From assembly GCA_002269645.1 (NCBI GenBank), contig NIVC01001840.1, positions 124,001 through 188,000 of the forward strand: DNA of 64,000 nucleotides. The letters run 5' to 3'. Both the position numbers and the translations under genes were made by a program. Under the pieces are notes generated by a model that was not told the DNA's origin, searched no databases, and saw nothing but the letters and a program-made list of their open reading frames with translations. This stretch comes from Macrostomum lignano. Its lineage: Eukaryota. Shown piece after piece: positions 38,900 to 64,000 of this stretch (positions are counted from its first letter, which is position 1; every line of letters begins with the position of its first letter).

Positions 38900-39690
38900 C
38901 TAAGTATGCTTCTTCACAAATTGGAATTTAGTGTAGAAATGCAGCGGAATCTCGTGCGTCTTCGCCAGCCCAGGCACTCGGTGGTCCCCGCCAGGGTGTT
39001 GTTCCAGAACCGCTCGACCATGCACTGCAGTGCCAGCCGTTGGAAATTATAGTAGAACTTGTTGACAAAGAACTCCAGCCTCTCATTCATAGCCGGCAGG
39101 TCTTTGATGCCCCAGATGCAGATCTGGCGCATAGCTTTGCCGGAGAGGCAGGTATAGCCGAACACGCCGAACAGCCAGTTCTTGTAGCGATTGAGAAACG
39201 GCTGCTTTACGTTGTCCGTCTTTAGGCCGGTCAGGTCTGCGCCAGGCACTTTGAGCACGTCCGGGTTGTGATTCAGCGAGGCAAATAAGGTCTCATCCGG
39301 GCACGGCCAGCTGCCGTGTTTTCTCAGGTGCTCAATGATCTGCCGCCCAACGCTCGAGAATACGTACTCTACGAATCCTCTGGTGGCGGTGATGTGCACC
39401 GAGCTTTTGTACCACTGGATCTCTTTCTTACTGCCGTCGGGCAGTTGAACCGAAGGCTGCGGCGTTCCTCTGTGCGTGCCGGCGTTCTCCAGGTTGTTTG
39501 CTCCGTTCAACGATTTGAGAATTCTAATGAGTTCGCGCATAGTGCGCAGCGGGTACTCCTGGCCTACCAGGTTGATGAAGTAACGCCATTTTTTGCTCAT
39601 CTCCAGCAGGCGCTTCATGCAGTACAGGTCGGCCTTTAGCACCGTGAACGTTCCCCACAGAGTATTCAATAATGGAAGAGTTTCAAAACT
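38900..39690 (-). CDS. Glycosyltransferase family 14 (core-2/I-branching beta-1,6-GlcNAc transferase), C-terminal half only
   Basis: ORF 38914..39669: WG..TVLKADLYCMKRLL, KWRYFINLVGQEYPLRT, CPDETLFASL, RQICIWGIKDL, FFVNKF. The N-terminal anchor and stem were not found; a frameshift near 38986-38989 is possible. Confidence 0.85.
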
Positions 39691-43259: not shown

Positions 43260-44066
43260 GGTTGTTAATCTGGGAGAGTTGTCTGGGGGAGTTTAGTTTT
43301 TTAGTCGTGGCTTTTAGCTACATGTAGTCACCGCGTTTTAGGCTCAAAGTTTATTATAGTTTAAAAAAAATGCTGTTTATGTCAGTCCCATTCTACACTA
43401 TTAATCACTAGTTGAGTTCGTGCCAATTTACATGATTAGCCAGTCGGGCGCTGGGCTGTGCGAGCATTTGAACTTGCCACATTCACATCGCTTTTTCTTC
43501 TATTGCTCTCGAGTCTCGGATATCTACCATCCATATAAAAATGATATACAGATCCTTAGCCAGACTTCTGGATAAAATCACAAGTATTCCTCACTGACAA
43601 CGGCCAACAGCAAAGTTTCTAAGCTAAATCACAGCTTAGAAAAGCAGCTAAAACAAGTACAACAAAGCAGCAAAGCAACAAAAAATGATGTAAGTTTTTT
43701 AGCGCCAGGTGCCATTCCAAGCAAAACTGATACCAAAAGCCTGGATCGATCGATCTTAAGCAACAATATCCATGCTATTCACCAAACTTTTAGATAATCG
43801 TGAGGACTTTTTGATAAATCCGACTGGTCGCTCTGGTAAGATGTAAGATGTAATGGCAAGGGCCATCTCCAACCAAGTGCTAGAAACTTTAAAATAACCT
43901 TTTTATGCTTTGTAGACAGATCGAACAACTTTACCTCCAGAACTTTCTGTCCACTGTTTGACATTACCGGAAGAAGCTAAGTTAAAACAGGGCTTGTCCT
44001 AAATCGCCCTGCTTCTTGCAATCGTTGACTGCAATCAACTCTGAGCGGCCAAGAGCTATCAATAGC
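43260..44066 (+). mobile_element. Old, heavily degenerate RT/RNase H LINE 3' portion ending in the (AAC)n tail at 44067
   Basis: Remnant peptides: VFSRG..HV, YVSPILHY (cf. YVRPVLEY), VFLTD, APG, CPLFDI, and terminal IALLLAIVDCNQL* (stop 44042-44044), which matches the terminus of the adjacent intact copy. Confidence 0.6.
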
Positions 44067-44146
<80 letters not shown>

Positions 44147-44147
44147 C
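44067..44147. repeat. (AAC)n, about 27 units
   Basis: Direct inspection; one AAT variant. Confidence 0.98.
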
Positions 44148-44938
44148 TACACCGATGGCTCGGCCATCGGAGGGGTCGAAAACGGCGGAGCCGCTTGGAT
44201 CCTCCTCGACCATGATGGCACTAGCCGTCGCCGCGGGCACGCAGCAGCTGGTCGCTGGTGCAACTCTTACGAAGCCGAATTAATGGCCATCAAGCTCGCC
44301 CTGGAAGACATTATCAGCTCCGAACCGCGCCATGCCGTCATACTGACCGACAGCCAGAGCGCCATCGCCGCCATCAAAGCTGACCGTCCAACCCTCAACC
44401 TGCGGCTTGAGCAAGTTAAAGATCTCCTCGCTAACGCAGCCATGCACACGAAGATCGCCCTGCAATGGGCTCCGGGACATTCGGGAGTGCCCGGTAACGA
44501 ACTGGTCGACGCAGAGGCCAAGTTCGCGGCCACTCTGCCTCAAGACGAGTCCGAAATTTCCCTTGCAGCTGCTAAAGAGCGCATCCGCCATCATCTCAAG
44601 TACCGCCCAACCCTTCAGGGGCACTTAGCCGAGGTCTATGGTAAAAAGATCTCCTTCCATCAGGGACCGCGTCGCCAACAAATCCTCGTGGCGCAGGTCA
44701 GAGCAGGCCACTGCCCTGTCTCCAACTATTACCGCAACCGCACCGACATCACCGAAGGCGGCCCCTGCCGACTTTGCCTGGATGTTCCGGACCAATTCCA
44801 CCTCTGGACCTGCCCCAAGCTCGAAGCTAATCGGCGCAACATCGGCGTCACTAGTCTGAGTGACTTTGCACGTGGTGACTTGGTGGCGCAGCTCCTGGGA
44901 GCCGTCGACTGGCGGCCCCTGTGAGTTGCTCACCGCAG

Positions 44939-45018
<80 letters not shown>
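44148..45018 (+). mobile_element. 5'-truncated LINE (RNase H domain plus Cys/His C-terminus, uninterrupted frame) with (AAC)n tail
   Basis: YTDGS, YEAELMAI, ILTDSQSAI, LQWAPGHSGVPGNELVDAEAK, RAGH, CRLC..HLWTCP; stop at 44924, 16-nt 3' UTR, (AAC)n at 44941-45018. Confidence 0.92.
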
Positions 45019-45019
<1 letters not shown>

Positions 45020-45423: not shown

Positions 45424-46506
45424 CTACAAGTGGGTCACGGCGTCGATAGTTGATATGTACACACTGGAAGATGCTTGCGTCGCTTGGTTCTCCTCAGCAG
45501 CAGTGGAAGCAGCGGCAGTGGCGTCGGCGCTTGGTCGATGGCGACTGGCGATGCCAGCACCAACGCTGGCGCTACGCGAAGCGAGCCCTCGATGGCCGGT
45601 GATACGTCTGAACAGGTGCGTTCCAAAGTAAATAAACGGATTAGCCAGACTATTGGCAGCGGTCAACAGGTACACCAGAATGTTGACTACTTCGCTTTCA
45701 GTGTAGTATTTCTGAATGTTATCGTCCAGTAAGCGCAGTCCACCATCGATGAACCAGAGTACGTTGGGGAAAGCTTGCGTCAGAACGAACACGATGCTAT
45801 TAGCTAGCATGATTTTCGTGAAACTCCTGGCCGCTGCGCTAAATGTTCGACAAGAGGTTCGCTTTCTGCACAGCTCTCTCAGGACCAGGCCGTAGAACAC
45901 TGTCATGGACACTAGCGGCAGAATAAAAGCGGCCAGTATCCAAACGTAGAACTGGATTGTGAAGAACAATCGCCAGTGCACGATAACGTAGTCGCTTTTC
46001 CTAGTTGGGTCGCAGTTTCCGTCAACTAAGACTGGCGGCAGGCACCAGGGAGCCGAAACCAGAGCGCTGGCCAGGACGCACGCGCCAATTCCGAGCAGAA
46101 CGGTTCGCATCTTCAGGAATTTGTAACGCATCGGCTGGCACACGGCCACGTATCTCTCGCAGGCCACCAGGCACAGGTTGAACACGGACCAGAGGAACAG
46201 GCACCAGAACAGCATGCCAGTGTAGGCCACATTGCACAGAAACAGATCCAATGGTAGCCAACCAGACAGAGGTAAATTGTTCCAGTCCTGCAGCTGGTAG
46301 AGCAGAGCGGCCGTGCACACGCTCAGGTCCAACCAGGCCTGCAGTCTGAACAGAGCCAACGGTAACCGGCTGGTGACTCGATTGCACACCAGGTAGACGA
46401 ATAACAGCAGGTTGAGCAGGATGCCCAGCGCGTTCACTGGCACGTAGATTAGGCGAGTGGGCAACGAACTTGTCGAGTTGTCAGTCGTAGAAATTTCTAG
46501 CGACAT
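45424..46506 (-). CDS. Intronless rhodopsin-like (class A) GPCR, 360 aa, paralog 1
   Basis: Seven hydrophobic segments, CERYVAVC (DRY-like), Cys at the top of TM3 and in ECL2, ANPFIY (NPxxY). ATG at 46506; the ORF track starts at an upstream GTG. Confidence 0.92.
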   Translation of the reverse strand: MSLEISTTDNSTSSLPTRLIYVPVNALGILLNLLLFVYLVCNRVTSRLPLALFRLQAWLDLSVCTAALLYQLQDWNNLPLSGWLPLDLFLCNVAYTGMLFWCLFLWSVFNLCLVACERYVAVCQPMRYKFLKMRTVLLGIGACVLASALVSAPWCLPPVLVDGNCDPTRKSDYVIVHWRLFFTIQFYVWILAAFILPLVSMTVFYGLVLRELCRKRTSCRTFSAAARSFTKIMLANSIVFVLTQAFPNVLWFIDGGLRLLDDNIQKYYTESEVVNILVYLLTAANSLANPFIYFGTHLFRRITGHRGLASRSASVGAGIASRHRPSADATAAASTAAEENQATQASSSVYISTIDAVTHL

Positions 46507-46734
46507 CACATGCGATATTCAATTAGCAGATTCATACATTTCATACAGTTCATACATTTTCCCCTGCTTTAAAGCTAGTTGTAAATTGCTCAACCAAATT
46601 TCTGCTAGCCAATGAGAAGCCTCACGCTGAACATACGAGCTACTCCGTTATTGAGCAGCTATAGTTTTAGATAAGCAACCTGCATCAGAAGCCTTTTTGC
46701 CTGTGCTTTAAACCGTTCTCTCCTACGAGCTTGG

Positions 46735-51628: not shown

Positions 51629-52624
51629 ATGCTGGACCGGAACTCGAGCACGGCAAATTCTCTGGACACTCGCCTAATCTACGTGCCAGTGAACGCGCTG
51701 GGCATCCTGCTCAACCTGCTGTTATTCGTCTACCTGGTGTGCAATCGAGTCACCAGCCGGTTACCGTTGGCTCTGTTCAGACTGCAGGCCTGGTTGGACC
51801 TGAGCGTGTGCACGGCCGCTCTGCTCTACCAGCTGCAGGACTGGAACAATTTACCTCTGTCTGGTTGGCTACCATTGGATCTGTTTCTGTGCAATGTGGC
51901 CTACACTGGCATGCTGTTCTGGTGCCTGTTCCTCTGGTCCGTGTTCAACCTGTGCCTGGTGGCCTGCGAGAGATACGTGGCCGTGTGCCAGCCGATGCGC
52001 TACAAATTCCTGAAGATGCGAACTGTTCTGCTCGGTATTGGCGCGTGCGTCCTGGCCAGCGCTCTGGTTTCGGCTCCCTGGTGCCTGCCGGAGATGCTAA
52101 TTGACGGCGTCTGCGACCCGTCGATTCAAGGCGATTACGTAATCAACCGCTGGCGCCTGTTCTTCACTATCCAGTTTCATATTTGGTTTTTTGTAGGCTT
52201 CGCCCTGCCACTGTTGGCAATGTCGGTGTTCTACGGCCTGATCCTGTGCGAGCTGCACGGCAAGCGGCATTCTTGCACCACCTTCAGCTCGGCTGCCAGG
52301 AGCTTCACCAAGGTGATGCTTGCAGCCAGCGCCGTGTTTGTTGTCACCCAGGCCTTTCCAAACCTGCTGTGGTTCCTGGACGGTGCGTTGCACGTCCTAG
52401 ACGCGGGCATGCAGGAGTACTTCACCGAGAGTGCCTCGATCAATATTCTTGTTTACCTGCTGACTGCGGTTAACAGTTTGGCCAATCCCTTTATCTATTT
52501 TGGAGCTCACCTGCACAGGCGGCTTTGTAGGCAGCCAGGTACAACGACAGCAACGTCGCAGCAGCAGCAGCAGCAGCAGCAGCAGTCCGAAAGCAACTGG
52601 CAGGTGGAAATCACCCGTCTGTGA
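51629..52624 (+). CDS. Intronless rhodopsin-like (class A) GPCR, 331 aa, paralog 2
   Basis: Seven TM segments, CERYVAVC, ANPFIY, short poly-Q tail; N-terminal half identical to paralog 1 at protein level. Confidence 0.92.
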   Translation: MLDRNSSTANSLDTRLIYVPVNALGILLNLLLFVYLVCNRVTSRLPLALFRLQAWLDLSVCTAALLYQLQDWNNLPLSGWLPLDLFLCNVAYTGMLFWCLFLWSVFNLCLVACERYVAVCQPMRYKFLKMRTVLLGIGACVLASALVSAPWCLPEMLIDGVCDPSIQGDYVINRWRLFFTIQFHIWFFVGFALPLLAMSVFYGLILCELHGKRHSCTTFSSAARSFTKVMLAASAVFVVTQAFPNLLWFLDGALHVLDAGMQEYFTESASINILVYLLTAVNSLANPFIYFGAHLHRRLCRQPGTTTATSQQQQQQQQQSESNWQVEITRL

Positions 52625-54135: not shown

Positions 54136-54659
54136 ACTCTCAACTTTATTAGAACTATTTTTTCGAAACGATACTTGAAATTTACTTTAAAAAACCTGTT
54201 GTTGGATGAATTTTTTTTCGTTTGAAAAATTCACGAACCTTAAATATTATTTTTCCTGTTGTAGTTTATGCATGCGAATATACACTAAATATAGTTGCGT
54301 ACTTTGCACAAGAAACTGTGTGCCAGAGGAAATTGATAAAGAAGCAATGAGCAGCTGAGTGAGAGACTGGGCCAGGTGAGAAAAGTCCGGACAGGCCTAT
54401 TTTACCTCTTCGAGAAGCACTCAGTTGCAAGAGAGTAATCTCCAAGATCGTGACAGACAGACATACGTGCGAGAATCAATATCCTAAATACTCATATAGA
54501 TAGTGGGCTAGTACAAGAAATACTTGAAAAACGGCTTCTAAATATAGACATGATTTTTTTACAAATGACGTCTACAAATCACAGGTGACAAGCAAAAAAC
54601 TTTCTGATTTCAGATTCGGACAAGCCATCATCGACTTTCAGATTTGGCAAGTAAAGCAT

Positions 54660-54970
54660 TGGTTGTTGTTGTCGTTGATGTTGTATGTTGTTGCTGTTGT
54701 TGTTGTTGTTGTTGTTGTTGACTGCGGACCGAGCTCGAAATAACCGGACCAGGTACCAAACCCCTACCGCTGACAGAGCCAGCGACAAAGGCTGAGCACA
54801 GAGGGCCGGACCGAGCCACATCCACCGCCCCTGAGCCAGGAGCGGTGACCGATTCCCGGCGCTCTTCGCCGCCCGAAGAACGGGCGTTGCCTCCCCCCCG
54901 CGACAAAGACGCGGCGCCGGATAGGGCCTGCTGATTACCCAGCAGGCTGGGAGTAAATCCCAGGGGGTGC

Positions 54971-55056
<86 letters not shown>

Positions 55057-55265
55057 TTGTATGCGGTGAGCCTCTCCTAAAGGTGACACCAACCGATGGC
55101 CCCTAGGAGAAGCGCCATTTCGTCGGCGCGAGCGAGTTGACACATTTCGGTAATGCCGTGAGTATGGCGTTGGATGTCCAGGGCCGGGCAGTTGAGAAGG
55201 TGTGTTGTTGTTGTTGTTGTTTGTGGTGGTGTTGTTGGTGTCTTTGTCTTTGTTGTTGTTGTTGT
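54660..55265 (-). mobile_element. Stack of short 3' ends of (AAC)n-tailed LINEs separated by (AAC)n tracts
   Basis: 55054-55200 encodes HLLNCPALDIQRHTHGITEMCQLARADEMALLLGAIGWCHL* and ends GCTCACCGCATAC-(AAC)n, matching the copy at 44148-45018. 54721-54970 ends CCGCAGT-(CAA)n and is more diverged. Confidence 0.75.
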
Positions 55266-56214
55266 TTTATTTTTTCGATACATATATGGGCTCCGATGCT
55301 ACTTTTATCTTGTATGAAATTCTGCTTATTTAACAGAATCAAGCATAGCTCGTAGCGAATCAGAACTAAAATATATATTTTACCTGTGTTGCAGTTTGGA
55401 TGCAAGTCCCTCGGGAAGAAGGAGGATAAAGTATTAATAATTTTTGACATGTCATCAGAGAAGCCACAACAATCAATCAATGCTATCAGACCTATTAGAT
55501 TCTATTAGATAGCTACCGCGAGGCAATTTCTTATGAGGGGAAAATTGTTTTAATAATGATTGCCTATCGAAGCTTTTTCCTTCGAATTCCGGATGAGATC
55601 CCTCAGAGGCCTGCAGACTCCTAAAGCAGATTCAGCAATCGATGTAGCTATCGAGGCTACAGCAGATCAAGGAAGAGAGGCAAATAGATTGAAAAAAACA
55701 GCGTATAGATCGAAGCTCACGGCAGTTTTCAAAGTCTAACAGACCTAAATTTAGTACCCAAAAACGCAGCTTTTTTCGACGTGATTCTCAAAGCGAAGTG
55801 TCCTATCAATACGAAGATAAACAAACTTATTTGATCAATTATACATCCATGGACAACTGCTGTAGAAGGACGCTGCAATCGATGTTTTTGAGAAATGAGG
55901 CGGCTAAGGAACGTATATTTGTCGCAGATGACGAAGAGTGTTGACGTCATCTTGTACTCGTACAGAGCGCCATAAGAACGTTGGAGTCGATTTTATTACG
56001 AGTAATGCCGCAGTCACGTCTTTTTCGTCTATGGCACAAGGTGTGGCTATGTTGTTGCCCTTATGGTATGATGCGAATACTCTGGTCGCATCGCTAAGAA
56101 CGCATTACTCTAAATGGGGTCTCGCCAAAGACACATCTGGTCAAAGGAAATCCTCCCTAGAAACATCTCTCGATTTCTCATGAGCATACCAATATAAGTT
56201 CCTTATTCGCCTTA

Positions 56215-56345: not shown

Positions 56346-58893
56346 TGCAGTGAAAACCGGCTTAGGCCGGTTATTAGCTATTCGGAAATTAAAACGAGTT
56401 AACAGTGCGTTTTACTTAGGAGTCAATAAATAGTATCTGTAATAAGCATGCTTAACTACTAAAACATTATCGTCGCTTCATATTTATATTCAGTAGAATA
56501 GATTCAGTAATTTTAAATACGTTTTTTACTCGTATATCTTTCGATTTCAAACTAGCTAAAATGACTACGACGTTAAGACGTGTCGCAGTCAGTCATCATT
56601 AGCTAAATTAGCTAATTAGGGTTGTTGTCATTAGCTAAAACGCGTTGCAAACTAAATGGCTTATTATGAGATTAAATCTGAACACTGCTTAATGAATGGC
56701 TAGCGAAAGTCGAGGGTACACCCTAAGTGAGAGCGCGTGGTGTCTGCTTCCTGTGTGCAAACTTGCCTCCTAAATTTTCGACCTGATTTGCTATGATGAC
56801 CGAAGCCCGGCATACATATGAACACACTAATTTAGTAAAAGCTGATGTCGTGCACCTGTCTAACCATAGGAAACAGTACTCGCAACATTCTGTGCTACTT
56901 AATTCTCCAGTCTCCTGTAAGCGCGCCTCATCCAAACAAAAAGATTGAACTCGGAACATCCTACAAGCTGATGTATCCCAGTTCATAATTAGCATAGTAA
57001 ACCGCAGCAAACAAAAGGGTTAGCATGCATCGATCCCTCATTTCGACAGATTGCTCATTAAGACGCGCACAAAATGCTCATACTACTTGCCCATTTGCAT
57101 CTAGGTCCATTGGCAAAGTCACCATTGAACGATACATGCAGTGTGTGTATCGAGTCGAGCTTTGAGCATCCGCTCTCAATCTGCTCGCTAACTAGCTAGC
57201 TCGTGCACTGCAACTTGAGACAGAAGCGACTCGTATGCGCAGGCGAACTAATCCTCCGAGTCGCCTCAAACATGTCCTACTCGTGCTTATAATTACTTCT
57301 AATCCCTTCTTCTGTATGTCTATACTCGCGGAGTAGCTATGCGTGTACTCAGTTGAGTTTGCGAATTCATCCAAAGCTACCACTGCATGTGGCTGCATGT
57401 GAGCTATACGTACGCTCACGCATGCACACTGGGCACGAGAGGGAGAGGGGGGGGAAACGGCTCAGCATCTGGCTGCCGAGCTTTAAAGCAAGTGCTTCAA
57501 TCCCGTCCTGTGCCCAGCACGCACCATTGAGCTGCCCATGCTTTTTCTTGATTCGCCCATTTCTTCCATCCCAACGGAGCCCCTCCCTTGGCCTGTACCC
57601 TTTTTTGATCTCCGTTTTTGCAGGCTTCCCTCCATCCAACATCCACCGACGGGAATGCCCTACTCTCCTCTCATGCATGCAGGTCTCGAAGCCGCATACA
57701 GTAGCTCTTAATCCCTTGCCCCATGCTAGATCTTTCCTTGTTGGTCCACTTCTTTCTTCGTTAAGTAATACTATGAAAGTGTATATGAACACCTCTTGCA
57801 TACTTCGCTAGATACCAGCTACATAGCATGTATTCATCTTCGATTGTATTCGCATTTTCAGAAGTGCAACAACCCCTCTCCTCGCCAAACCGCCCACAAG
57901 GCCACTGTAGATTGAACCACGAGCCTGTCCTTACACTTGTATTGTGATTGCACCTTACAATCTCATCCAATGGTTGAGTTCCCCAGCGGCTGAGCTTAGC
58001 TAGCTTAGCTACTATAATAAGACTTATTTTACCTGCGTAGGATTGAGGTACGAGCTACCTAGTTACGCCGACGTATTCAGACTCGATAAGGCGCTGTATT
58101 GAACCCTGATTATTCGATCAGTTGTGCCAGCATTCACCGCATGAGTCATCCGCAGCGTCGCTGCAACTCGGCTACCAGCCGTAGCAGCGCTTCCGGCGAC
58201 TCGAACCATGAAGGCGGCGGAAGTGGCACGGTCGCAGGTGGCGCTACCGCAGCTACCGGCGGATGCTTTGAGTCAGTGCACGAACGGGTTGGCAGCTACT
58301 TTAAAGTCAAAGGGATTAGAAGAACGTCTAGGTGAGTGCATGAAGCTTTACTATAGTATTACTGAGCAAGCACGCGAGAGCTTATAAAAGAGTACTTGAT
58401 GCGTCGAGTCCATAATTTCCCTCTTGAGTCAGCTAATGAGTGGGTACATGTAATTCTTGGGTGAGCTTTGAGTTCGAAAAAGTTCATGGCTGAGTTCATC
58501 AGTGTGTTCCCTGCAGTGGCTCCTCTGCTCTCGGCCCTAGCTTTCTCCGACGTGCCCCCGGCATCCCGTTTCGGCCATGCATTGTTGCGCATCAGTGGCA
58601 TGCTGTTCTGACTATATGCACTTTTTAAAATTAAACCTGCTCTAATGGGCAGATGTGCAACCGACAGCGGAGCCGAAGCTATTGCGCGGCGCATCTAAAA
58701 GGCTGCTTACGGCTTTTAATTCAGTCCAAGGGGGGGGGGTCGTCACACACCCTCAAATACCCCCAGCTTATATAATAATGCTGGTACCCATTTTTCAGTT
58801 AACCTGGGTTAACTGAAGGAATGCAGAGTTATAAGTGTCTTGATGACTTCATCAAGGACGCAATTGTTACGAGTGGATCGAGAATCGAACCCC

Positions 58894-61800
58894 CGGGAGA
58901 GCAACAACCTGCGCCTCCCCGAGGTGCCCTCTGGAGGACCGAAAGGTTCACGAAATGCAGGTCAGCAACGGGCCCTTCTCGAGGCCCAACACCGCGACGC
59001 AGTCTCTTCGCCGCCCAATTGGAATCTGGCGGCCACCTGCCGATTAAATGACTAGCCGACGCCTGAACCAGCCCGCCGAGCCTCAACGGCGGGCCCCCGG
59101 CGGCGCGAGGCGCCCCCCGACCCAGCGGCCCGTGCGCGCGCGGCCCCCCAGTAGCCTACACCTCCTGCAACTCAACGCAGAGGGCGTCGCCTCCAAGATG
59201 TCCGAATTGTGCAAGCTGCTGCTGGATCTGCGCATCGACGTGGCGTGCCTGCAAGAGACCCACACCACCGAGGGTCGGGATCCGCGCCTGCCAGGGTTCA
59301 ACGCGATCTGGCGCCACCGACAGAGCGGCCGGCGCTCCGGCGGCCCCACGCGCGGAGGAGGCGCTGCAATCCTCATCCGCGAGAGGCTGCGCTTCGAGGT
59401 GCTGCAGGAGCGCCCCTGCGCCCCCGATGACGTCACCACGGAGTGGGCCGGCGTCCGGGTTTTCCCCTCTGAAAAGAGCGTCGAGAGCCTGGACATCCAC
59501 TGCCTCTACATCCCGCCGATCAGAACGGCTGAAGGCGACGACCGCGTGCAGCGCTTCAGCCCCCAGCACCTCCCGTCCGGCGTCAACACGGTGATCCTGG
59601 GCGACCTGAACGCGCACCATCCGGCCTGGGACCCCGAATCGGAAGAGTCGGACCTGGGCACGGTGGTCTTCGAGTGGTCCGTGGTGTCCGGCATGCGCGT
59701 CCTGAACGACAACAGCGCCACCCACATGCCGCGCCGCGCCAACACCCGGCAGACGGCGCCTGACGTCAGCCTGTCCCACAAGTCGCTCGCCAACCGGGCC
59801 GAGTGGCAGGTCCGGGGAGACGTCGGCTCGGACCACCTGCCGATCTGCATCACCATCCACAGCCGAGGCGCGGCCAAGCGCGGGGGCGCCGCCCGGCGGT
59901 CCTGGGCGAAGGCGGACTGGGCCCGGACCGAGGAAGCCCTGGCTGGCTGGGAGGCCTGCCCGCCCGAGTCGGTCAGCGAGGCCAACCAGCAGCTGACCAC
60001 GGCCATCCAGGCGGCCGACAAGGCGTCTGTCCCTCGCGGGGCGCGGCCCTCCGCGAAGGCCTGGTGGACGCCAGAGGTCGACGACGCCGTGAAGGCTCGC
60101 CGCGCCGCGTGGGCCGCCGCCGCCGCCGACCCGAGCGTGCGGCCTGCCTGGAATCGAGCCTGTGCCGACGCCAAGAAGACGATCGCCGACGCCAAATGCG
60201 AGAGCTGGAGGACCTTTGCCGGCGAGGTGGCAGCTGACAGCGACCACTCCAAGATCTGGAGAGTTGTTCGCTCCCTCGACGGCAGAAATAGCAACCTGCA
60301 GCGGGACGCAGCGCTCTGGGTGGGCCAAAAGACGCTCGTCCAGTCGAAGGACATCGCCGAGGCCTACGCCCGTGAGTATGCCGCCGTCAGCCGCCTCCCT
60401 GACGATCTGCACTGAACATCTGCAGCACCTCGGTGCCGCTGGCCGCCGGGCGGTCCTGCAGCTGATCAACGCGTCCTGGACCCAGGGGGAGGTCCCCGCG
60501 GCGTGGCGCCGTGCCCACATCGTGCCGATCCTCAAGAAGGGCAAGCCGGCCGACGAGATCGGCTTATACCGGCAGATTGCCCTCACCTCCACTCTGGCCA
60601 AGCTGGCCGAGCGTCTGGTTCAAGCGCGGCTCTACTGGTGGGCCGAGTCCCGGCACTTGCTGCACCCCGCCCAAGCCGGCTTCCGCAAGCGGCGCAGCAC
60701 CGAGGACCAGATTGCCCGCCTCACCCAGCTCATCAGCGACGGCCACCAGGCGGCCCCCGCTAGGCGGACGGTCGTCGTCCTGTTCGACTTCCGGTGGGCG
60801 TACGACAAAGTCTGGAAGCAGGGCCTGCTGCACAAGCTGCACAACGCCGGCATCCCAGCGGCCGGGGTCCGCTGGCTCAGCAGCTTCCTGGCCGATCGCC
60901 GCGCTGCCGTCAGGGCGGCTCTTCCGAGAGGGCCTGCCACAGGGGAGTGTCCTTGCCCCTCTGCTCTTTGCGCTGTACATCAACGACCTGCCTGACCACC
61001 TGCCGTCCGACTGCACGCCGTTCCTCTTCGCCGACGACCTGGCCATCGCAGTGCAAGGCCTGACCGTGGAAGAGGCCGAGACGAAGGCGCAGGCTGCGAT
61101 CGACGCGGTCTCCGACTGGGCGACCGAGTGGCGGATGGAGCTGGCGCCGAACAAGTGCGCCGCTTCCCTGTTCACCACCACCGCTGGAGAGGCCAGCCGC
61201 GAGCTGCGTCTGCGGCTGAACGACGCCCCGCTCTCGACGGACCGCCAGCCGCGCTTCCTCGGCGTCATCCTGGACCGGCTGCTCAGCTTCACGGCGCACG
61301 CCGCCAACGTCGCCGGCCGCGCCCGCGCCCGCTGCGGCGTTCTGGCGGCGCTGTCTGGCAGCAACTGGGGCGCCAAGCAGAGCGACGTGCGCCAGCTCCA
61401 CACGGCCTACGTGCGGCCGGTGCTGGAGTACGCTGCCGGCGCCTGGATGCCGACGGCCTGCAGGACAGCTATCGACCACCTGGACCGGGCCCAGCGCCTG
61501 GGCGCGCGCATCATCACCGGGTGTCTACGGAACACCAGGTCGGAGGTGCTGGAGCGCGAGGCCGAGTTGCCGCCGATGGCAGTCCGCGCGGAGATGCACG
61601 CTGGCCTCCTCCACGAGCGCGCCCTCAGGCTGCCGCATGACAACCCGCTGCGCGCCTGCGCGGCCAGCGTCGGCCCGCGTCGCCGCCTCCAAAGCGCCCG
61701 CGGCTGGCGCGAGACGGCGGCCAGTGTATGCAGCGCTGCGGGCCTGGGCGGCTTCCCGCGAGAGCCTGTCCACGCTGTCCCGACGACACTTCCCTGGGCT

Positions 61801-62780
61801 GTTCTGGACTCCGTCACCCTCGGGCTGCAGCTGGCCTCCCCGACCTCGCGGGGGGACCTGCCGGAGGCCCGGAGAGCCGCGGCGGAGCAGACGCTTGCTG
61901 TCCTGCCGCCCGCCAGCACCGTGGTCTGGACCGACAGAGCGGCGAAGGACGGCATCCTGGACGGCGGCAGCGGCGTCCTGGTCGAGTCCAACACGACGCT
62001 GTGCGTCGCTGCTGGCCATGTGACGTCCAGCTTCCACGCCGAGTTAGTGGCCATCGCTGAGGCCCTTCGGTGGGTGCTCGCGGCCCCGGACCCGGCAGAG
62101 CTGTCGCCGGTCCGCATCTGCTCCGACTCCCTGAGCGCGCTTAGCGCGCTCGCGTCCGGCCCCGGGTCGACGGGCGCCACCATGATCGACGCCGTCTGGG
62201 CCAGCCTCGCCGACCTCGCGGCCCGGGGAACCTCGGTCCACCTGCAGTGGGTGCCTGGCCACGCGGGAATCCCCGGCAACGAGGCCGTGGACGAGATCGC
62301 CAAGCGAGGCTCCACGCTGGCGCAAGGCACCGCGCCAGTCCCGCTAGCTTCCGCGCAGGCTGCCGTCCGCCGCCACTGCCTCACCCGCTGGCACCAGATC
62401 TACAACGCGGCGGCCACCGAGGCGGCGAGCACGAGCTCGCTTGCCTGGCACCTTGCCTGCACGGCGGGCCGCCTGCCGCCTCAGCCGACGAGCGACCGCT
62501 GCCTGGCCCTGCGGGGCTTCCAGGCCGCCATCGGCGTTGACGTGGCCCCCACCTGCCGCTTCTGTGGCGATGGAGAGGAGACGGCGGCCCATCTGCTGAT
62601 CTCCTGCCCCGCCCTGACATCACACCGCTGCCTCCTCTGGGGGCCAAGCCCGGAGCGCGCGGCAGTTTTCGAGAACTGCGTCGCGGTGTTGAACTTCCTC
62701 GGGAAGGCGGGCGCCATCTGACGCCCGGTGCCATGGGCCCTGGCCCGAGCACGCCCGAAGAAGAAGAAGAAGAAGAAGAA
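58894..62780 (+). mobile_element. Near full-length single-ORF LINE (APE-RT-RNase H-CCHC), Ingi/I-group-like, inactivated by two internal lesions
   Basis: APE (LQLNAEG, CLQET, GDLNAH, GSDHLPI) from ATG 59048; RT (PILKKGK, QAGFR, LPQGSVLAPLLF, FADD, RFLGVILD); RNase H (WTD, HAELVAI, SDSLSAL, WVPGHAGIPGNEAVD); CRFC..H..C; stop at 62721; (AAG)7 tail; 13-bp TSD AGAATCGAACCCC at 58881-58893 and 62777-62789. Frameshifts with apparent deletions near 60400 and 60915. Confidence 0.95.
58896..58962 (+). ncRNA. HDV-like self-cleaving ribozyme (predicted) at the LINE 5' end
   Basis: P1 58896-58902/58926-58932 (G.U at the cleavage site, one A-C mismatch); P2 58907-58912/58957-58962 (6 bp perfect); P3 58913-58915/58923-58925; L3 UCCCCGA; P1.1 C58917-C58918/G58933-G58934; P4 58936-58949 with GAAA loop; J4/2 A-C58951-GAAAU. 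Confidence 0.85.
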
Positions 62781-64000
62781 TCGAACCCCGACCTTTCAGT
62801 CGTGAATCCGACGCTCTAACCACTATATCGGTGCTTGAACTCAATGCGGGATCTAGGCAAGCGGAGTTCAAGGGGATCGCGAAGAAAATCCTTGGATCCG
62901 CCACTGGCTACAGCTAGCTAGTACGTTCAGAGGGCGCAGCCAGGAATTTTGGAGAGATGGGGTTTGTATATCAAAGCTAGGGGTCAAGAGGGTTGACGAC
63001 TTTTGACTACCATCCTGTACAGAATTTATTACTCTACAAGAGAGGGGTCCCGTACAGAAAAGCTCATTACTCCTCTCAAAATGAAGATTGACAAAAATCG
63101 AGTTGTGCATCTTTGTAGAGAGATAAATTTTGTACAGCAGGATGGCGAAGAATAACCATGCAGCTTTCTAGGTTCAAAAATAAATCCAGGGAGCATTAGA
63201 AAAAACCAGCCTCCAACAATTTTCTGCAAGATTTGGCCAGTTTTTCCTCCCTAGTTAAGTACTCCCTGGTGTAGTGTAGAGATTGGCCTTTCATGGCGTT
63301 ATACTTGAGCATGTATTGATCGGTGGGTTCGTAGCTGACGGGTGGTGGGGCGGGGGGTCGGAGACAGTGTGATTTTCATAGGTTGTACCCATATCCGCAG
63401 CAGGTCTCCAAAGGAAAGCAGAATTTATTGATAATTGATTACTGACAATTAAAACGGGTAGGGAATCCCACTTTTTAGCAATCTGAAACCGCAGCAAAAC
63501 AACGACTATTTAGACGTTAATTATGGAACTGGCGGTAACAAAAAGCAAAAGAATCAAATAAAAACGTTTTTAATTGTTTTCTACCGCATATTCGTGATTT
63601 TTTGTTTTAACGCGACTTTCCATGAAATAATTCTATAAGCGTCGGCTCCTTAGCGCTTGAGCTGTATAGTGGCATAGTGGCATAGCTAGGCTAGGCCTAC
63701 TTCATTGTGTTACTATTGCAATTTGCAAGTCTGTGTGATCTAATCTGATAGTCGCGAACTTCATTTGTTAGACAGCGACTGTTAAGTTTATTGTCAAAAT
63801 TCGCACTGCGAATTGATTTTGCTATCTATTTTTTTATTGTAGTATGGCAGAGAGACTCATTTCTTCTACTGGCTACGTACCTGAAGACGGAATGACTGGC
63901 GCTCAGCTTTTCGAGAAAGGAGCTGGTATGACATACAAGTAAGCAACAATAAACAACTTTTATGTCATTCATTTGGTTTGTTAACAATAAAACTTTGAGT

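What the first reader, a model, noticed from the sequence alone, without database searches (positions are those of the whole stretch)
54660..55265. Second, independent (AAC)n-LINE stack on the opposite strand (locus 2)
On the minus strand the order is: AAC-like tract, ~150-bp LINE end, (AAC)~27, ~250-bp segment, (AAC)n. The first segment encodes HLLNCPALDIQRHTHGITEMCQLARADEMALLLGAIGWCHL*, which aligns without gaps to HLWTCPKLEANRRNIGVTSLSDFARGDLVAQLLGAVDWRPL* at 44.8-44.9 kb and shares the pre-tail motif GCTCACCGCA. The second segment shares CCGCAG before its tail and a weak RLC..ALSAVGVW similarity. The same architecture at two loci 10 kb apart, from diverged subfamilies, argues against local duplication. 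It also means some apparent poly-Q/poly-N ORFs and (AAC)n microsatellites in this genome may be retrotransposon tails.
Basis: partly seen in the sequence, partly recalled or inferred. Interest (0 to 1): 0.75.

Follow-up and report, generated by a model that had tools for sequence, protein, structure and literature searches.

The report
AAC-tailed LINE stack with ribozyme-like rider
Two short retrotransposed pieces sit head-to-tail between three (AAC)n tracts in what is most likely a Macrostomum flatworm genome: one is the tail end of a LINE, and the other is a 250-base non-coding element that seems to begin with an HDV-like self-cleaving ribozyme, an arrangement that fits the known habit of some LINEs of inserting into the microsatellite that matches their own tail.

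Summary
On the minus strand, 55266-54662 reads: degenerate (AAC)n, a 142-bp segment, pure (AAC)30, a 250-bp GC-rich segment, (CAA)n.

Segment 1 is the 5'-truncated 3' end of an RNase H-bearing LINE. It covers 41 codons, the stop codon and the motif GCTCACCGCA. It is 45% identical in protein to the locus-1 LINE at 44.15-44.94 kb, and the two diverged under purifying selection.

It shares only the pre-tail motif GCTC..CCGCAG. Its 5' half matches Rfam's HDV-like ribozyme model below the gathering score, and an unscored pseudoknot pairs in the correct register.

The best relative is a Macrostomum lignano UniProt entry. Two M. lignano entries and two marine-metagenome relatives also show LINE copies directly preceded by (AAC)n or poly-Q.

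The best reading is that a LINE lineage with (AAC)n tails integrates into (AAC)n tracts, and that segment 2 is a short non-autonomous rider. This is a new member of known kinds. The ribozyme rests on a single copy and is untested.

The parts
55203..55266 (-). Upstream (5') degenerate (AAC)n tract. It is the presumed old target microsatellite or an orphan tail. No LINE 3' motif precedes it.
   Evidence: TRF gives 21 units at 77% match. Sequence read.
55061..55202 (-). Segment 1, a 5'-truncated LINE 3' end: the last 41 codons (55202-55080), stop TAG (55079-55077), and a 16-nt 3' UTR ending in GCTCACCGCAT.
   Evidence: Translation. BLASTP E=1e-10 to the locus-1 C-terminus. tblastn E=1e-8. Also matched by the C-termini of P0009, P0154 and P0028. 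Codon-position identity 63/68/37%.
54971..55060 (-). (AAC)30, the tail of segment 1 and at the same time the 5' flank of segment 2.
   Evidence: TRF gives 30 copies at 97% match.
54721..54970 (-). Segment 2, a 250-nt GC-rich non-coding element that ends in GAGCTCGGTCCGCAGT just before its tail. It is a candidate non-autonomous (SIDE/NARTc-like) retroelement.
   Evidence: No similarity to LINE ORFs. Single copy in the window. The whole segment folds with z=-4.2. It shares the pre-tail motif.
54858..54969 (-). Candidate HDV-like ribozyme. P1 5' strand is either CACCCCC (54969-54963, distal) or CCUAUCC (54925-54919, proximal). J1/2 hairpins are at 54962-54926. P2 is GGCGC (54918-54914) paired with GCGCC (54862-54858). 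P3 is GCG (54912-54910) paired with CGC (54902-54900). L3 is UCUUUGU. P1' is G7 (54899-54893). J1/4 is AGGCAA. P4 is at 54886-54870. J4/2 is GCGAAGA, with the putative catalytic C at 54868.
   Evidence: Rfam RF02682 scores 29.5 bits against a gathering score of 44. E=0.0024 for the 901-nt region and E=0.17 for the whole window. P2 pairs in the same register as in the model consensus, with a chance of 0.0019. The distal P1 fold is -51.5 kcal/mol and the proximal is -45.1 kcal/mol.
54721..54857 (-). 3' domain of segment 2, a long stem-loop followed by UCGGUCCGCAGU. It is the presumed recognition end for the LINE reverse transcriptase.
   Evidence: MFE -68.2 kcal/mol, z=-4.1 against 300 dinucleotide shuffles.
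54662..54720 (-). (CAA)n tail of segment 2. About 8 units are pure, and the tract then merges into a degenerate tract.
   Evidence: TRF gives 19 units at 85% match. Sequence read.
44066..44151 (+). Locus 1: the (CAA)28 tract directly 5' of the truncated LINE.
44151..44938 (+). Locus 1: a 5'-truncated LINE (RNase H domain, CCHC knuckle, stop at 44922-44924, 3' UTR GTTGCTCACCGCAG).
   Evidence: Pfam RNase_H E=1e-12. Translation. About 95% identical in in-frame blocks to M. lignano A0A1I8HLF9.
44939..45019 (+). Locus 1: the (AAC)27 tail.

Best explanation
Locus 2 is a head-to-tail pile of two separately retrotransposed copies inside one (AAC)n tract.

The host genome is most likely Macrostomum lignano or a close congener. 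It carries a lineage of APE-type, RNase H-bearing LINEs whose RNA ends in a short conserved motif (GCTCACCGCAG/T) followed by (AAC)n.

Proposed mechanism (inferred, not shown). During target-primed reverse transcription, the nicked bottom strand of an (AAC)n.(GTT)n tract can base-pair with the (AAC)n RNA tail. New copies therefore enter existing (AAC)n tracts, including the tails of earlier copies, always in the orientation of the tract. Each new copy brings a fresh tail that becomes the next target.

Segment 1 is an ordinary, severely 5'-truncated LINE copy (shown).

Segment 2 is a 250-nt non-coding passenger that borrows the same machinery through the shared 3' end (inferred). Its 5' half folds as an HDV-like self-cleaving ribozyme (predicted). 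Such a ribozyme would cut a read-through transcript at or near the element's 5' boundary. That would produce a unit-length template without a promoter of its own, as in R2 SIDEs and L1Tc/NARTc.
For: Segment 1 is a LINE:
- The LINE identity of segment 1 rests.
- Its divergence from locus 1 under purifying selection rests.
- Locus 1 has an RNase H domain and a CCHC knuckle.

Tails and 3' motif:
- The conserved pre-tail motif occurs only at the three tail junctions.
- All (AAC)n tracts in the window lie at the two loci, and each of the three tailed inserts directly abuts an upstream tract in the same orientation.
- The outer tracts of locus 2 are degenerate, and the tract just 3' of each insert is pure. 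This is what fresh tails dropped into an old tract would look like.
- Relatives carry (AAC)n tails: L007 (AAC)24, L002 (CAA)11, L010, L045, L046, and P0094, whose ORF reads through into a poly-Q run.

Copies preceded by (AAC)n elsewhere:
- The full-length LINE in L008 is preceded by (AAC)n.
- In L007 the (AAC)24 tail is followed by the 5' end of another LINE, E=7e-17 to the L008 N-terminus.
- In M. lignano A0A1I8HLF9 the same family as locus 1 is truncated at a different codon and is directly preceded by KKKQQQQ.
- In M. lignano A0A1I8I0H8 a Q7 run directly precedes a LINE truncated in the RT thumb.
- A neighbouring LINE with a (GAA)8 tail has a 12-bp target-site duplication that begins with GAA, which is consistent with tail-target pairing.

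Ribozyme:
- The 4-kb, 65-70% GC LINE in the same window gives no such hit.
- P2 pairs in the correct register, with a chance of 0.0019.
- The L3 U...G, the J1/4 AGGCAA and the J4/2 GCGAA core are all present.
- The more stable P1 puts the cut 1 nt inside the (AAC)n/segment-2 junction.
- Long structured J1/2 regions and variable P1 positions are documented for retrotransposon HDV-like ribozymes (PMC3774820, PMC4908430).
Against: - No genome-wide census was possible, so 'preference' rests on three inserts in the window plus four cases elsewhere.
- No target-site duplications can be seen inside a microsatellite.
- Segment 2 is a single copy here. It found nothing in a metagenome pattern scan or in a protein search, so its mobility, copy number and LINE partner are not shown.
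- The ribozyme score is below Rfam's gathering score (29.5 against 44 bits), and its whole-window E-value is only 0.17.
- Both P1 options carry one mismatch, and position +1 is C rather than the usual G.
- A loose structure-only descriptor matches about 29 places in the window, so the fold alone is not significant.
- Because P1' is a G7 run, six different pyrimidine-rich 7-mers can serve as P1.
- No HDV-like hit was found at the 5' ends of related LINEs.
- A shared 3' hairpin is not supported by covariation across three sequences.
Confidence: 0.62

Rival explanations
1. The stack arose in one event by template switching. During a single round of target-primed reverse transcription, the reverse transcriptase first copied segment 2's RNA. 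It then jumped from that RNA's 5' end onto the (AAC)n tail of a second RNA, the segment-1 LINE, and copied part of it. The result would be one chimeric insert.
For: Template jumps onto other RNAs are documented for R2 (PMC3414825). Both segments lie on the same strand and are joined only by tail sequence.
Against: - The top of each stack (55266-55203 and 44066-44151) is a bare tract with no LINE 3' motif upstream, so at least the top tract pre-existed or is an orphan tail.
- The outer tracts are degenerate and the inner tracts are pure, which suggests different ages.
- Full-length copies are also preceded by (AAC)n in L008 and L007.
Confidence: 0.12
2. Segment 2 is merely a 5'-truncated long 3' UTR of another (AAC)n-tailed LINE family, or another retro-copied cellular RNA. 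On this view the ribozyme match is a chance product of GC-rich, structured sequence.
For: - The match is below the gathering score, with a whole-window E-value of 0.17.
- The structure-only descriptor is not specific.
- Segment 2 is a single copy with no homolog found.
- P1 is imperfect.
Against: - The 3' UTRs of the two related LINE ends are only 14-16 nt long.
- The P2 pseudoknot, which the model does not score, pairs in the exact consensus register, with a chance of 0.0019.
- The core nucleotides in L3, J1/4 and J4/2 match.
- 4 kb of 65-70% GC LINE sequence gave no such hit.
- No Rfam family for a cellular RNA matches.
Confidence: 0.3
3. The two loci are not independent. An ancestral (AAC)n tract or LINE tail downstream of an ancestral GPCR gene was copied by the inverted duplication that produced the two GPCR paralogs. 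Alternatively, unequal recombination between tails joined the segments.
For: Both stacks lie downstream of, and antisense to, one GPCR paralog, at 408 bp and about 2 kb from the stop codons. The paralogs are old: in the half not affected by gene conversion, third-position identity is 48%. Flank homology would therefore be undetectable even if it once existed.
Against: There is no flank homology at all. The LINE fragments are only 56% identical and diverged under selection. The same architecture occurs at unrelated loci in M. lignano proteins and in other organisms.
Confidence: 0.07
4. Nothing was transposed. The tracts are ordinary microsatellites, or are poly-N/Q coding sequence of a host gene (ORFs 54628-55143 and 44016-44924).
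For: Long ORFs span the tracts.
Against: The ORFs are made of the RNase H and C-terminal LINE parts plus repeats. Pfam finds no other domain. The stop codon and the 3' motif sit immediately before the tails.
Confidence: 0.01

Closest known systems
I factor of Drosophila and the I group of LINEs (I, Nimb, Ingi, Loa, R1, Tad1, Outcast)
   Same: Same domain order: APE, RT, then a C-terminal RNase H with a Cys/His knuckle (group definition in PMC4640811). The tail is a trinucleotide repeat rather than poly(A). The I factor ends in (TAA)n, and that repeat is needed for precise initiation (cited in PMC3747384).
   Different: The tail unit here is AAC. The clade was not resolved, because no RT phylogeny against reference elements could be run. 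The closest proteins are unnamed metagenome ORFs and mis-annotated M. lignano gene models.
Microsatellite-specific LINEs (Waldo/Mino, Kibi/Koshi, Dong, Togen, some HERO families)
   Same: Copies are embedded in one microsatellite, in a fixed orientation, and form head-to-tail arrays. The target equals the tail. The general phenomenon is described in PMC4640811 and PMC5035012. The family names other than Togen and HERO come from my own knowledge of Kojima & Fujiwara 2003/2004.
   Different: I know of no (AAC)n target reported for these families, although Repbase could not be checked. Specificity here is inferred from a handful of copies. It may reflect only tail-target pairing rather than a sequence-specific endonuclease.
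R2 SIDEs (short internally deleted elements) and R2 HDV-like ribozymes
   Same: A short element made of a 5' HDV-like ribozyme plus the 3' end recognised by the LINE protein. It sits in the LINE's specific target, and its 5' end is set by self-cleavage of a co-transcript (PMC3414825, PMC3774820). A long J1/2 and a movable P1 are also features of R2 ribozymes.
   Different: R2 uses a restriction-like endonuclease and targets rDNA. Here the partner LINE's own 5' end is unknown, and no ribozyme was found in related LINEs. Cleavage is untested.
L1Tc/ingi with NARTc, RIME and SIDER in trypanosomatids
   Same: These are I-group LINEs with RNase H. The LINE and its short non-autonomous derivatives share a 5' HDV-like ribozyme (PMC3185411, PMC3383444, PMC4035085). 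From my own knowledge, not checked here, NARTc is about 0.26 kb, similar to segment 2's 250 nt.
   Different: Those elements have poly(A) tails, a dual promoter/ribozyme (Pr77) and no microsatellite targeting. There is no sequence similarity.
Perere-3 with twister-variant ribozymes in Schistosoma mansoni
   Same: Another flatworm non-LTR element whose 5' end carries a self-cleaving ribozyme used to process co-transcripts (PMC8501958).
   Different: The ribozyme class is different (twister), the element is not site-specific, and the ribozyme sits on an autonomous element rather than a short rider.

Membership tests
APE-type non-LTR retrotransposon (LINE), RNase H-bearing I group | Reverse transcriptase domain | tested here: not met
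   Neither locus 2 nor locus 1 retains RT, because both are 5'-truncated. RT and APE are present upstream of the homologous RNase H/C-terminal region in relatives: L008 and P0012, P0022 and P0094. The fragments are therefore filed as LINE remnants, not as complete elements.
APE-type non-LTR retrotransposon (LINE), RNase H-bearing I group | RNase H domain and Cys/His knuckle at the C-terminus of ORF2 | tested here: met
   Locus 1 has Pfam RNase_H at E=1e-12 and the motif CRLC...HLWTC. Segment 1 keeps only the distal part of the knuckle (HLLNCP) and the C-terminus.
APE-type non-LTR retrotransposon (LINE), RNase H-bearing I group | Clade placement by RT phylogeny | not tested
   No reference RT sequences of named clades were available in the tools, and no RT is present in the fragments.
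APE-type non-LTR retrotransposon (LINE), RNase H-bearing I group | Variable 5' truncation with a constant 3' end and a repeat tail | tested here: met
   Truncation points differ among copies: TDGS (locus 1), RRGH (P0009), HLLNCP (segment 1) and the RT thumb (P0030). All end at the same C-terminus, motif and (AAC)n or Q-run.
Microsatellite-target-specific LINE | Copies flanked on both sides by the same microsatellite in the same orientation | tested here: met
   This holds for 3 of 3 inserts in the window. L008 is (AAC)n-flanked at its 5' end, and in L007 a tail is followed by the next LINE's 5' end. Poly-Q runs lie directly 5' of truncated copies in two M. lignano proteins.
Microsatellite-target-specific LINE | The majority of genomic copies reside in that target | not testable with these tools
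   The source genome is not in any searchable DNA collection.
HDV-like self-cleaving ribozyme | Match to a curated covariance model at its gathering score | tested here: not met
   RF02682 scores 29.5 bits against a gathering score of 44. E=0.0024 for the region and 0.17 for the window.
HDV-like self-cleaving ribozyme | Nested double pseudoknot (P1, P1.1, P2, P3, P4) with a catalytic C in J4/2 | tested here: inconclusive
   All helices can be drawn. P2 (5 bp) sits in the consensus register with a chance of 0.0019, and C54868 lies in GCGAAGA. However, P1 has one mismatch in either option, position +1 is C, and the fold alone is not statistically specific.
HDV-like self-cleaving ribozyme | Covariation across homologs; self-cleavage activity | not testable with these tools
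   Only one copy is available.
Non-autonomous LINE-dependent retroelement (SINE / SIDE / NARTc type) | 3' end shared with a partner LINE | tested here: inconclusive
   Only the last ~17 nt (GCTC..CCGCAG.C) and the (AAC)n tail are shared. A common 3' hairpin is not supported by covariation.
Non-autonomous LINE-dependent retroelement (SINE / SIDE / NARTc type) | Multiple dispersed copies with constant ends | not testable with these tools
   Segment 2 is a single copy in the 64-kb window, and the genome is not available.

The most novel reading that the evidence does not exclude
Segment 2 may be a full-length copy of an undescribed family of roughly 250-nt 'ribozyme-headed' riders in Macrostomum. 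On this reading an HDV-like ribozyme replaces the pol III promoter head of a classical SINE. The ribozyme would carve unit-length templates out of read-through transcripts of (AAC)n-linked retroelement stacks. An (AAC)n-targeting, RNase H-bearing LINE lineage would then copy those templates back into (AAC)n tracts. The microsatellite would serve as landing pad, primer-binding site and transcriptional conduit at once. It would also be the first HDV-like ribozyme reported from a flatworm, as far as the searched literature shows.
Probability: 0.35. Interest if true: 0.6.

Novelty: new member of a known kind. Interest (0 to 1): 0.42.

Why it matters
- Annotation: in this repeat-rich flatworm genome, many (AAC)n microsatellites and poly-N/Q/T 'ORFs' are probably LINE tails and insertion scars. 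UniProt gene models such as A0A1I8HLF9, A0A1I8I0H8 and A0A1I8JA23 already contain such debris.
- Transposon biology: this would add an (AAC)n target/tail pair to the list of microsatellite-homing LINEs.
- If the ribozyme holds up, it would add a third independent case, after R2 SIDEs and NARTc/SIDER, of a short element that pairs a 5' HDV-like ribozyme with a LINE 3' end.
- M. lignano is a transgenesis-capable laboratory model (PMC5730564), so cleavage and mobilisation are directly testable.

Tried and rejected
Segment 2:
- Protein similarity of segment 2 to LINE ORFs was tested in three frames, against the window LINEs and against 162 relatives. None was found.
- Nucleotide similarity of segment 2 to locus 1, segment 1 and the GC-rich LINE is not above shuffles.
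- Rfam at gathering score over the whole window found nothing, so segment 2 is not a known small-RNA pseudogene.

More copies of the ribozyme:
- An exact-pattern scan of metagenome contigs for the ribozyme core gave 0 hits.
- A protein search with the open frame of segment 2 gave 0 hits.
- The closest relatives' loci were scanned at E<=1, and 20 long loci at gathering score. No HDV-like hit was found.

Other tests:
- My own structure-only HDV descriptor matched about 29 places per window. It was too permissive and was dropped as evidence.
- The host could not be identified through the GPCR: no homolog at E<=1e-10 and no exact record. The host was identified instead through the LINE hit to M. 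lignano.
- Homology between the flanks of the two loci was tested and none was found. The test is weak because the GPCR duplication is old.
- A consensus 3' hairpin across the three tail-proximal ends was tested. The covariation term was unfavourable, so the result is inconclusive.
- Counting N-terminal poly-N/T/Q runs in the 150 best protein hits was not informative in bulk. Only individual cases could be read.
Full report
**What is there**

All coordinates in this section are on the minus strand. The region reads in this order:
- 55266-55203: a degenerate (AAC)n tract of about 21 units.
- 55202-55061: a 142-bp segment, segment 1.
- 55060-54971: a nearly perfect (AAC)30.
- 54970-54721: a 250-bp segment at 66% GC, segment 2.
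- 54720-54662: a (CAA)n tract. It is pure for about 8 units next to segment 2 and degenerate beyond.

It then has TAG and the 16 nt GAGAGGCTCACCGCAT.

Locus 1 has the same layout on the plus strand: (CAA)28 at 44066-44151, an ORF remnant at 44151-44924, the 3' UTR GTTGCTCACCGCAG, and (AAC)27 at 44939-45019.

Every (AAC)6-like match in the 64 kb lies in these two loci, where shuffles give none. The only corrections are small: the middle tract has 30 units, not about 27, and segment 1 is about 140 bp.

**Segment 1 and locus 1 are LINE 3' ends**

The locus-1 remnant carries a Pfam RNase H domain (E=1e-12), followed by a CX2C...HX3C knuckle and the C-terminus.

Segment 1 aligns without gaps to the last 38 residues at 45% identity. 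BLASTP gives E=1e-10, and tblastn over the whole window gives E=1e-8. It is also hit by the C-termini of other LINE proteins.

At the nucleotide level the two ends are 56% identical. Identity by codon position is 63%, 68% and 37%. They therefore descend from two subfamilies that diverged under protein-level selection, and one is not a local duplicate of the other.

By contrast, the 10-mer GCTCACCGCA just before each tail is identical, and it occurs nowhere else in the window.

**Host and relatives**

The word-index protein search found only eight distant metagenome hits. The exhaustive profile search found 4875 relatives.

The best relative, P0009, is UniRef100_A0A1I8HLF9 of Macrostomum lignano. 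Its in-frame blocks are about 95% identical to the locus-1 LINE. The window therefore most likely comes from M. lignano or a very close relative.

This fits the window's content: intronless rhodopsin-type GPCR genes, a core-2 branching-enzyme fragment, and an extreme load of tandem repeats. The M. lignano genome paper reports 15% simple and tandem repeats (PMC5730564).

RNase H downstream of RT places the lineage in or near the I group of LINEs (clade list in PMC4640811). I could not resolve the clade.

**Do relatives show the same tails and the same 5' flanks?**

Tails. Among 80 related metagenome loci, the closest ones end in (AAC)n: L007 (AAC)24, L002 (CAA)11, L010, L045 and L046. More distant ones end in other microsatellites such as ACCT, TC, AAG and ACG.

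5' flanks:
- L008 holds a full-length 1462-aa APE-RT-RNase H LINE that is directly preceded by an (AAC)n tract.
- In L007 the (AAC)24 tail is followed by an ORF homologous to the N-terminus of that LINE (E=7e-17). This is a head-to-tail stack in another organism.
- In M. lignano A0A1I8HLF9 the locus-1 family is truncated 26 codons further in and is directly preceded by KKKQQQQ.
- In M. lignano A0A1I8I0H8 a Q7 run directly precedes a LINE truncated in the RT thumb.
- In M. lignano A0A1I8JA23 and in P0094 the C-terminus runs into Q-runs.

That criterion is not met in the cases I could reach. A genome-wide count was not possible.

**Segment 2 is something else**

- It has no protein similarity to any LINE ORF in any frame.
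- It has no nucleotide similarity above shuffles to the LINE fragments.
- It has no second copy in the window.

What segment 2 does share is the very end. It has GAGCTCGGTCCGCAGT before (CAA)n, against GCTCACCGCAGA or GCTCACCGCATA in the LINEs. The pattern CCGCAKNCAAMAAC occurs only at the three tail junctions.

The whole segment is unusually structured (z=-4.2). Its 3' 137 nt form a long stem-loop (z=-4.1).

**A candidate HDV-like ribozyme**

An E-value scan of 901 nt around the finding gave one notable match. It is Rfam RF02682, the HDV-like ribozyme family defined on Faecalibacterium prausnitzii, at 54925-54855 on the element's sense strand. The score is 29.5 bits and E=0.0024.

This is below the family's gathering score of 44 bits. 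In a scan of the whole window the E-value is 0.17. The 4-kb, 65-70% GC LINE in the same window gives no such hit.

Reading the alignment, the core elements are all present:
- P3 is GCG/CGC.
- L3 is UCUUUGU, with the U and G of the consensus.
- P1' is a G7 run.
- J1/4 is AGGCAA, identical to the consensus.
- P4 is a 5-6 bp helix.
- J4/2 is GCGAAGA, which carries the candidate catalytic C at 54868.

The P2 pseudoknot is not scored by the covariance model. It pairs perfectly (GGCGC at 54918-54914 with GCGCC at 54862-54858) in exactly the register of the model consensus. Composition-matched shuffles give this with probability 0.0019.

The weak part is P1. The proximal option, CCUAUCC, has one mismatch and two G.U pairs. 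A distal option, CACCCCC at 54969-54963, has six G-C pairs and one mismatch, and it is favoured by about 6 kcal/mol. The distal option would leave two hairpins in J1/2 and would place the cut 1 nt inside the (AAC)n/segment-2 junction.

Long, structured J1/2 regions and shifting P1 strands are documented for retrotransposon ribozymes (PMC3774820, PMC4908430).

Caveats:
- The G7 run can pair with six nearby pyrimidine-rich 7-mers.
- A structure-only descriptor matches about 29 places in the window, so the fold alone proves nothing.
- There is only one copy, so there is no covariation evidence.
- Related LINE 5' ends show no ribozyme.

I put the chance that this is a true HDV-like ribozyme, active or relic, at roughly 60%.

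**Mechanism**

Shown:
- There are three tailed inserts.
- Each abuts a same-strand (AAC)n tract.
- They share a conserved pre-tail motif.
- Truncation points vary.
- The architecture recurs elsewhere.

Inferred: the (AAC)n RNA tail pairs with the nicked (GTT)n bottom strand of an (AAC)n tract and primes reverse transcription. This is analogous to poly(A)/T-rich priming in L1 and to the requirement for UAA repeats in the I factor (cited in PMC3747384). On this view tracts, including earlier tails, attract new copies in a fixed orientation, and stacks grow.

Two further observations fit this model:
- The outer tracts of locus 2 are degenerate, while the tract just 3' of each insert is pure.
- The neighbouring (GAA)n-tailed LINE has a 12-bp target-site duplication that begins with GAA.

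Segment 2 would be a non-autonomous rider that uses the shared 3' end. Its ribozyme would release a unit-length template from read-through transcripts, as in R2 SIDEs (PMC3414825) and L1Tc/NARTc (PMC3185411, PMC4035085). In flatworms, Perere-3 does the same with a twister variant (PMC8501958).

**Rivals**

- A single chimeric cDNA made by template jumping is possible. It does not explain the bare tracts at the top of both stacks or the differences in tract purity.
- Co-duplication of an ancestral tract with the inverted GPCR pair cannot be excluded. The paralogs are old: third-position identity is 48% outside a roughly 400-nt gene-converted stretch. Both stacks lie downstream of and antisense to one paralog. 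However, no flank homology exists, and the inserts themselves are clearly different.
- The main rival for segment 2 is that it is only a truncated UTR or a chance structure. I weight this at about 0.3.

**Novelty and verdict**

The following are all known kinds:
- trinucleotide-tailed LINEs;
- microsatellite-homing LINEs;
- head-to-tail arrays of such LINEs;
- ribozyme-plus-3'-end riders.

This locus adds an (AAC)n case in a macrostomid flatworm, and possibly a flatworm HDV-like ribozyme. The searched literature holds no report of the latter.

The finding is real and is mostly correctly interpreted for segment 1. Segment 2 is reinterpreted. Interest is moderate. The decisive data are a genome census and a cleavage assay, and both are straightforward.

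Noticed in passing
window 58882-62789 (+): A near-full-length, 65-70% GC LINE encoding APE, RT, RNase H and zf-RVT, with ORFs at 59048-60415 and 60511-62721. It has a (GAA)8 tail (62757-62780) and a 12-bp target-site duplication, GAATCGAACCCC (58882-58893 and 62778-62789). Joining the flanks gives a tRNA-like sequence on the minus strand that ARAGORN does not call. This is probably a tRNA-derived SINE or pseudogene hit in its T-arm.
   Followed up: partly
window 45424-46509 (-) and 51629-52624 (+): Two intronless rhodopsin-family GPCR paralogs in inverted orientation. The first ~400 nt of the aligned stretch are 94-100% identical, and the proteins share a 139-residue identical block. The rest is about 70% identical, with 48% identity at third positions. 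This looks like an old duplication with a recent gene-conversion tract. No homolog at E<=1e-10 was found in the protein database.
   Followed up: partly
L007 ~2009-2090 and L008 ~301-385: The N-terminal regions of the related full-length LINEs carry a 2A-like ribosome-skipping motif (AGDVE[R/E]NPGP) followed by Cys-rich, PHD-like repeats. 2A-like peptides are known in APE-type LINEs (PMC3708506).
   Followed up: no
L008 4897-6729 (+): A Penelope-like element ORF (RVT_1 plus GIY-YIG) lies about 260 bp downstream of the LINE tail in the same marine-metagenome contig.
   Followed up: no
Proteins P0009, P0022, P0030 (UniRef100_A0A1I8HLF9, A0A1I8JA23, A0A1I8I0H8; Macrostomum lignano): Long M. lignano gene models named 'C2 domain-containing protein', 'RNase H domain-containing protein' and 'ribonuclease H' are translations through LINE fragments, poly-Q runs from (CAA)n tails and tandem repeats. 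P0022 fuses LINE RT/RNase H with APC/Armadillo repeats. These are likely annotation artefacts.
   Followed up: partly
window 694-1861, 11358-12676 and 29785-30059: The same 42-bp minisatellite unit (AGAATGGATTGCTAATCTAGCC...) forms three arrays, the third in inverted orientation. The window also holds many other minisatellites and a 1.1-kb (AGAT)n tract at 25063-26178.
   Followed up: no
window 38914-39669 (-): An ORF with a Core-2/I-branching enzyme domain (Pfam Branch, E=2e-20). It is a likely host gene or gene fragment.
   Followed up: no
tool behaviour, vs 71: The word-index protein search missed the M. lignano entry that shares a run of 60 residues (58 identical) with the query. The exhaustive search found that entry as its top hit. 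Negative results from the index search are therefore weak.
   Followed up: no
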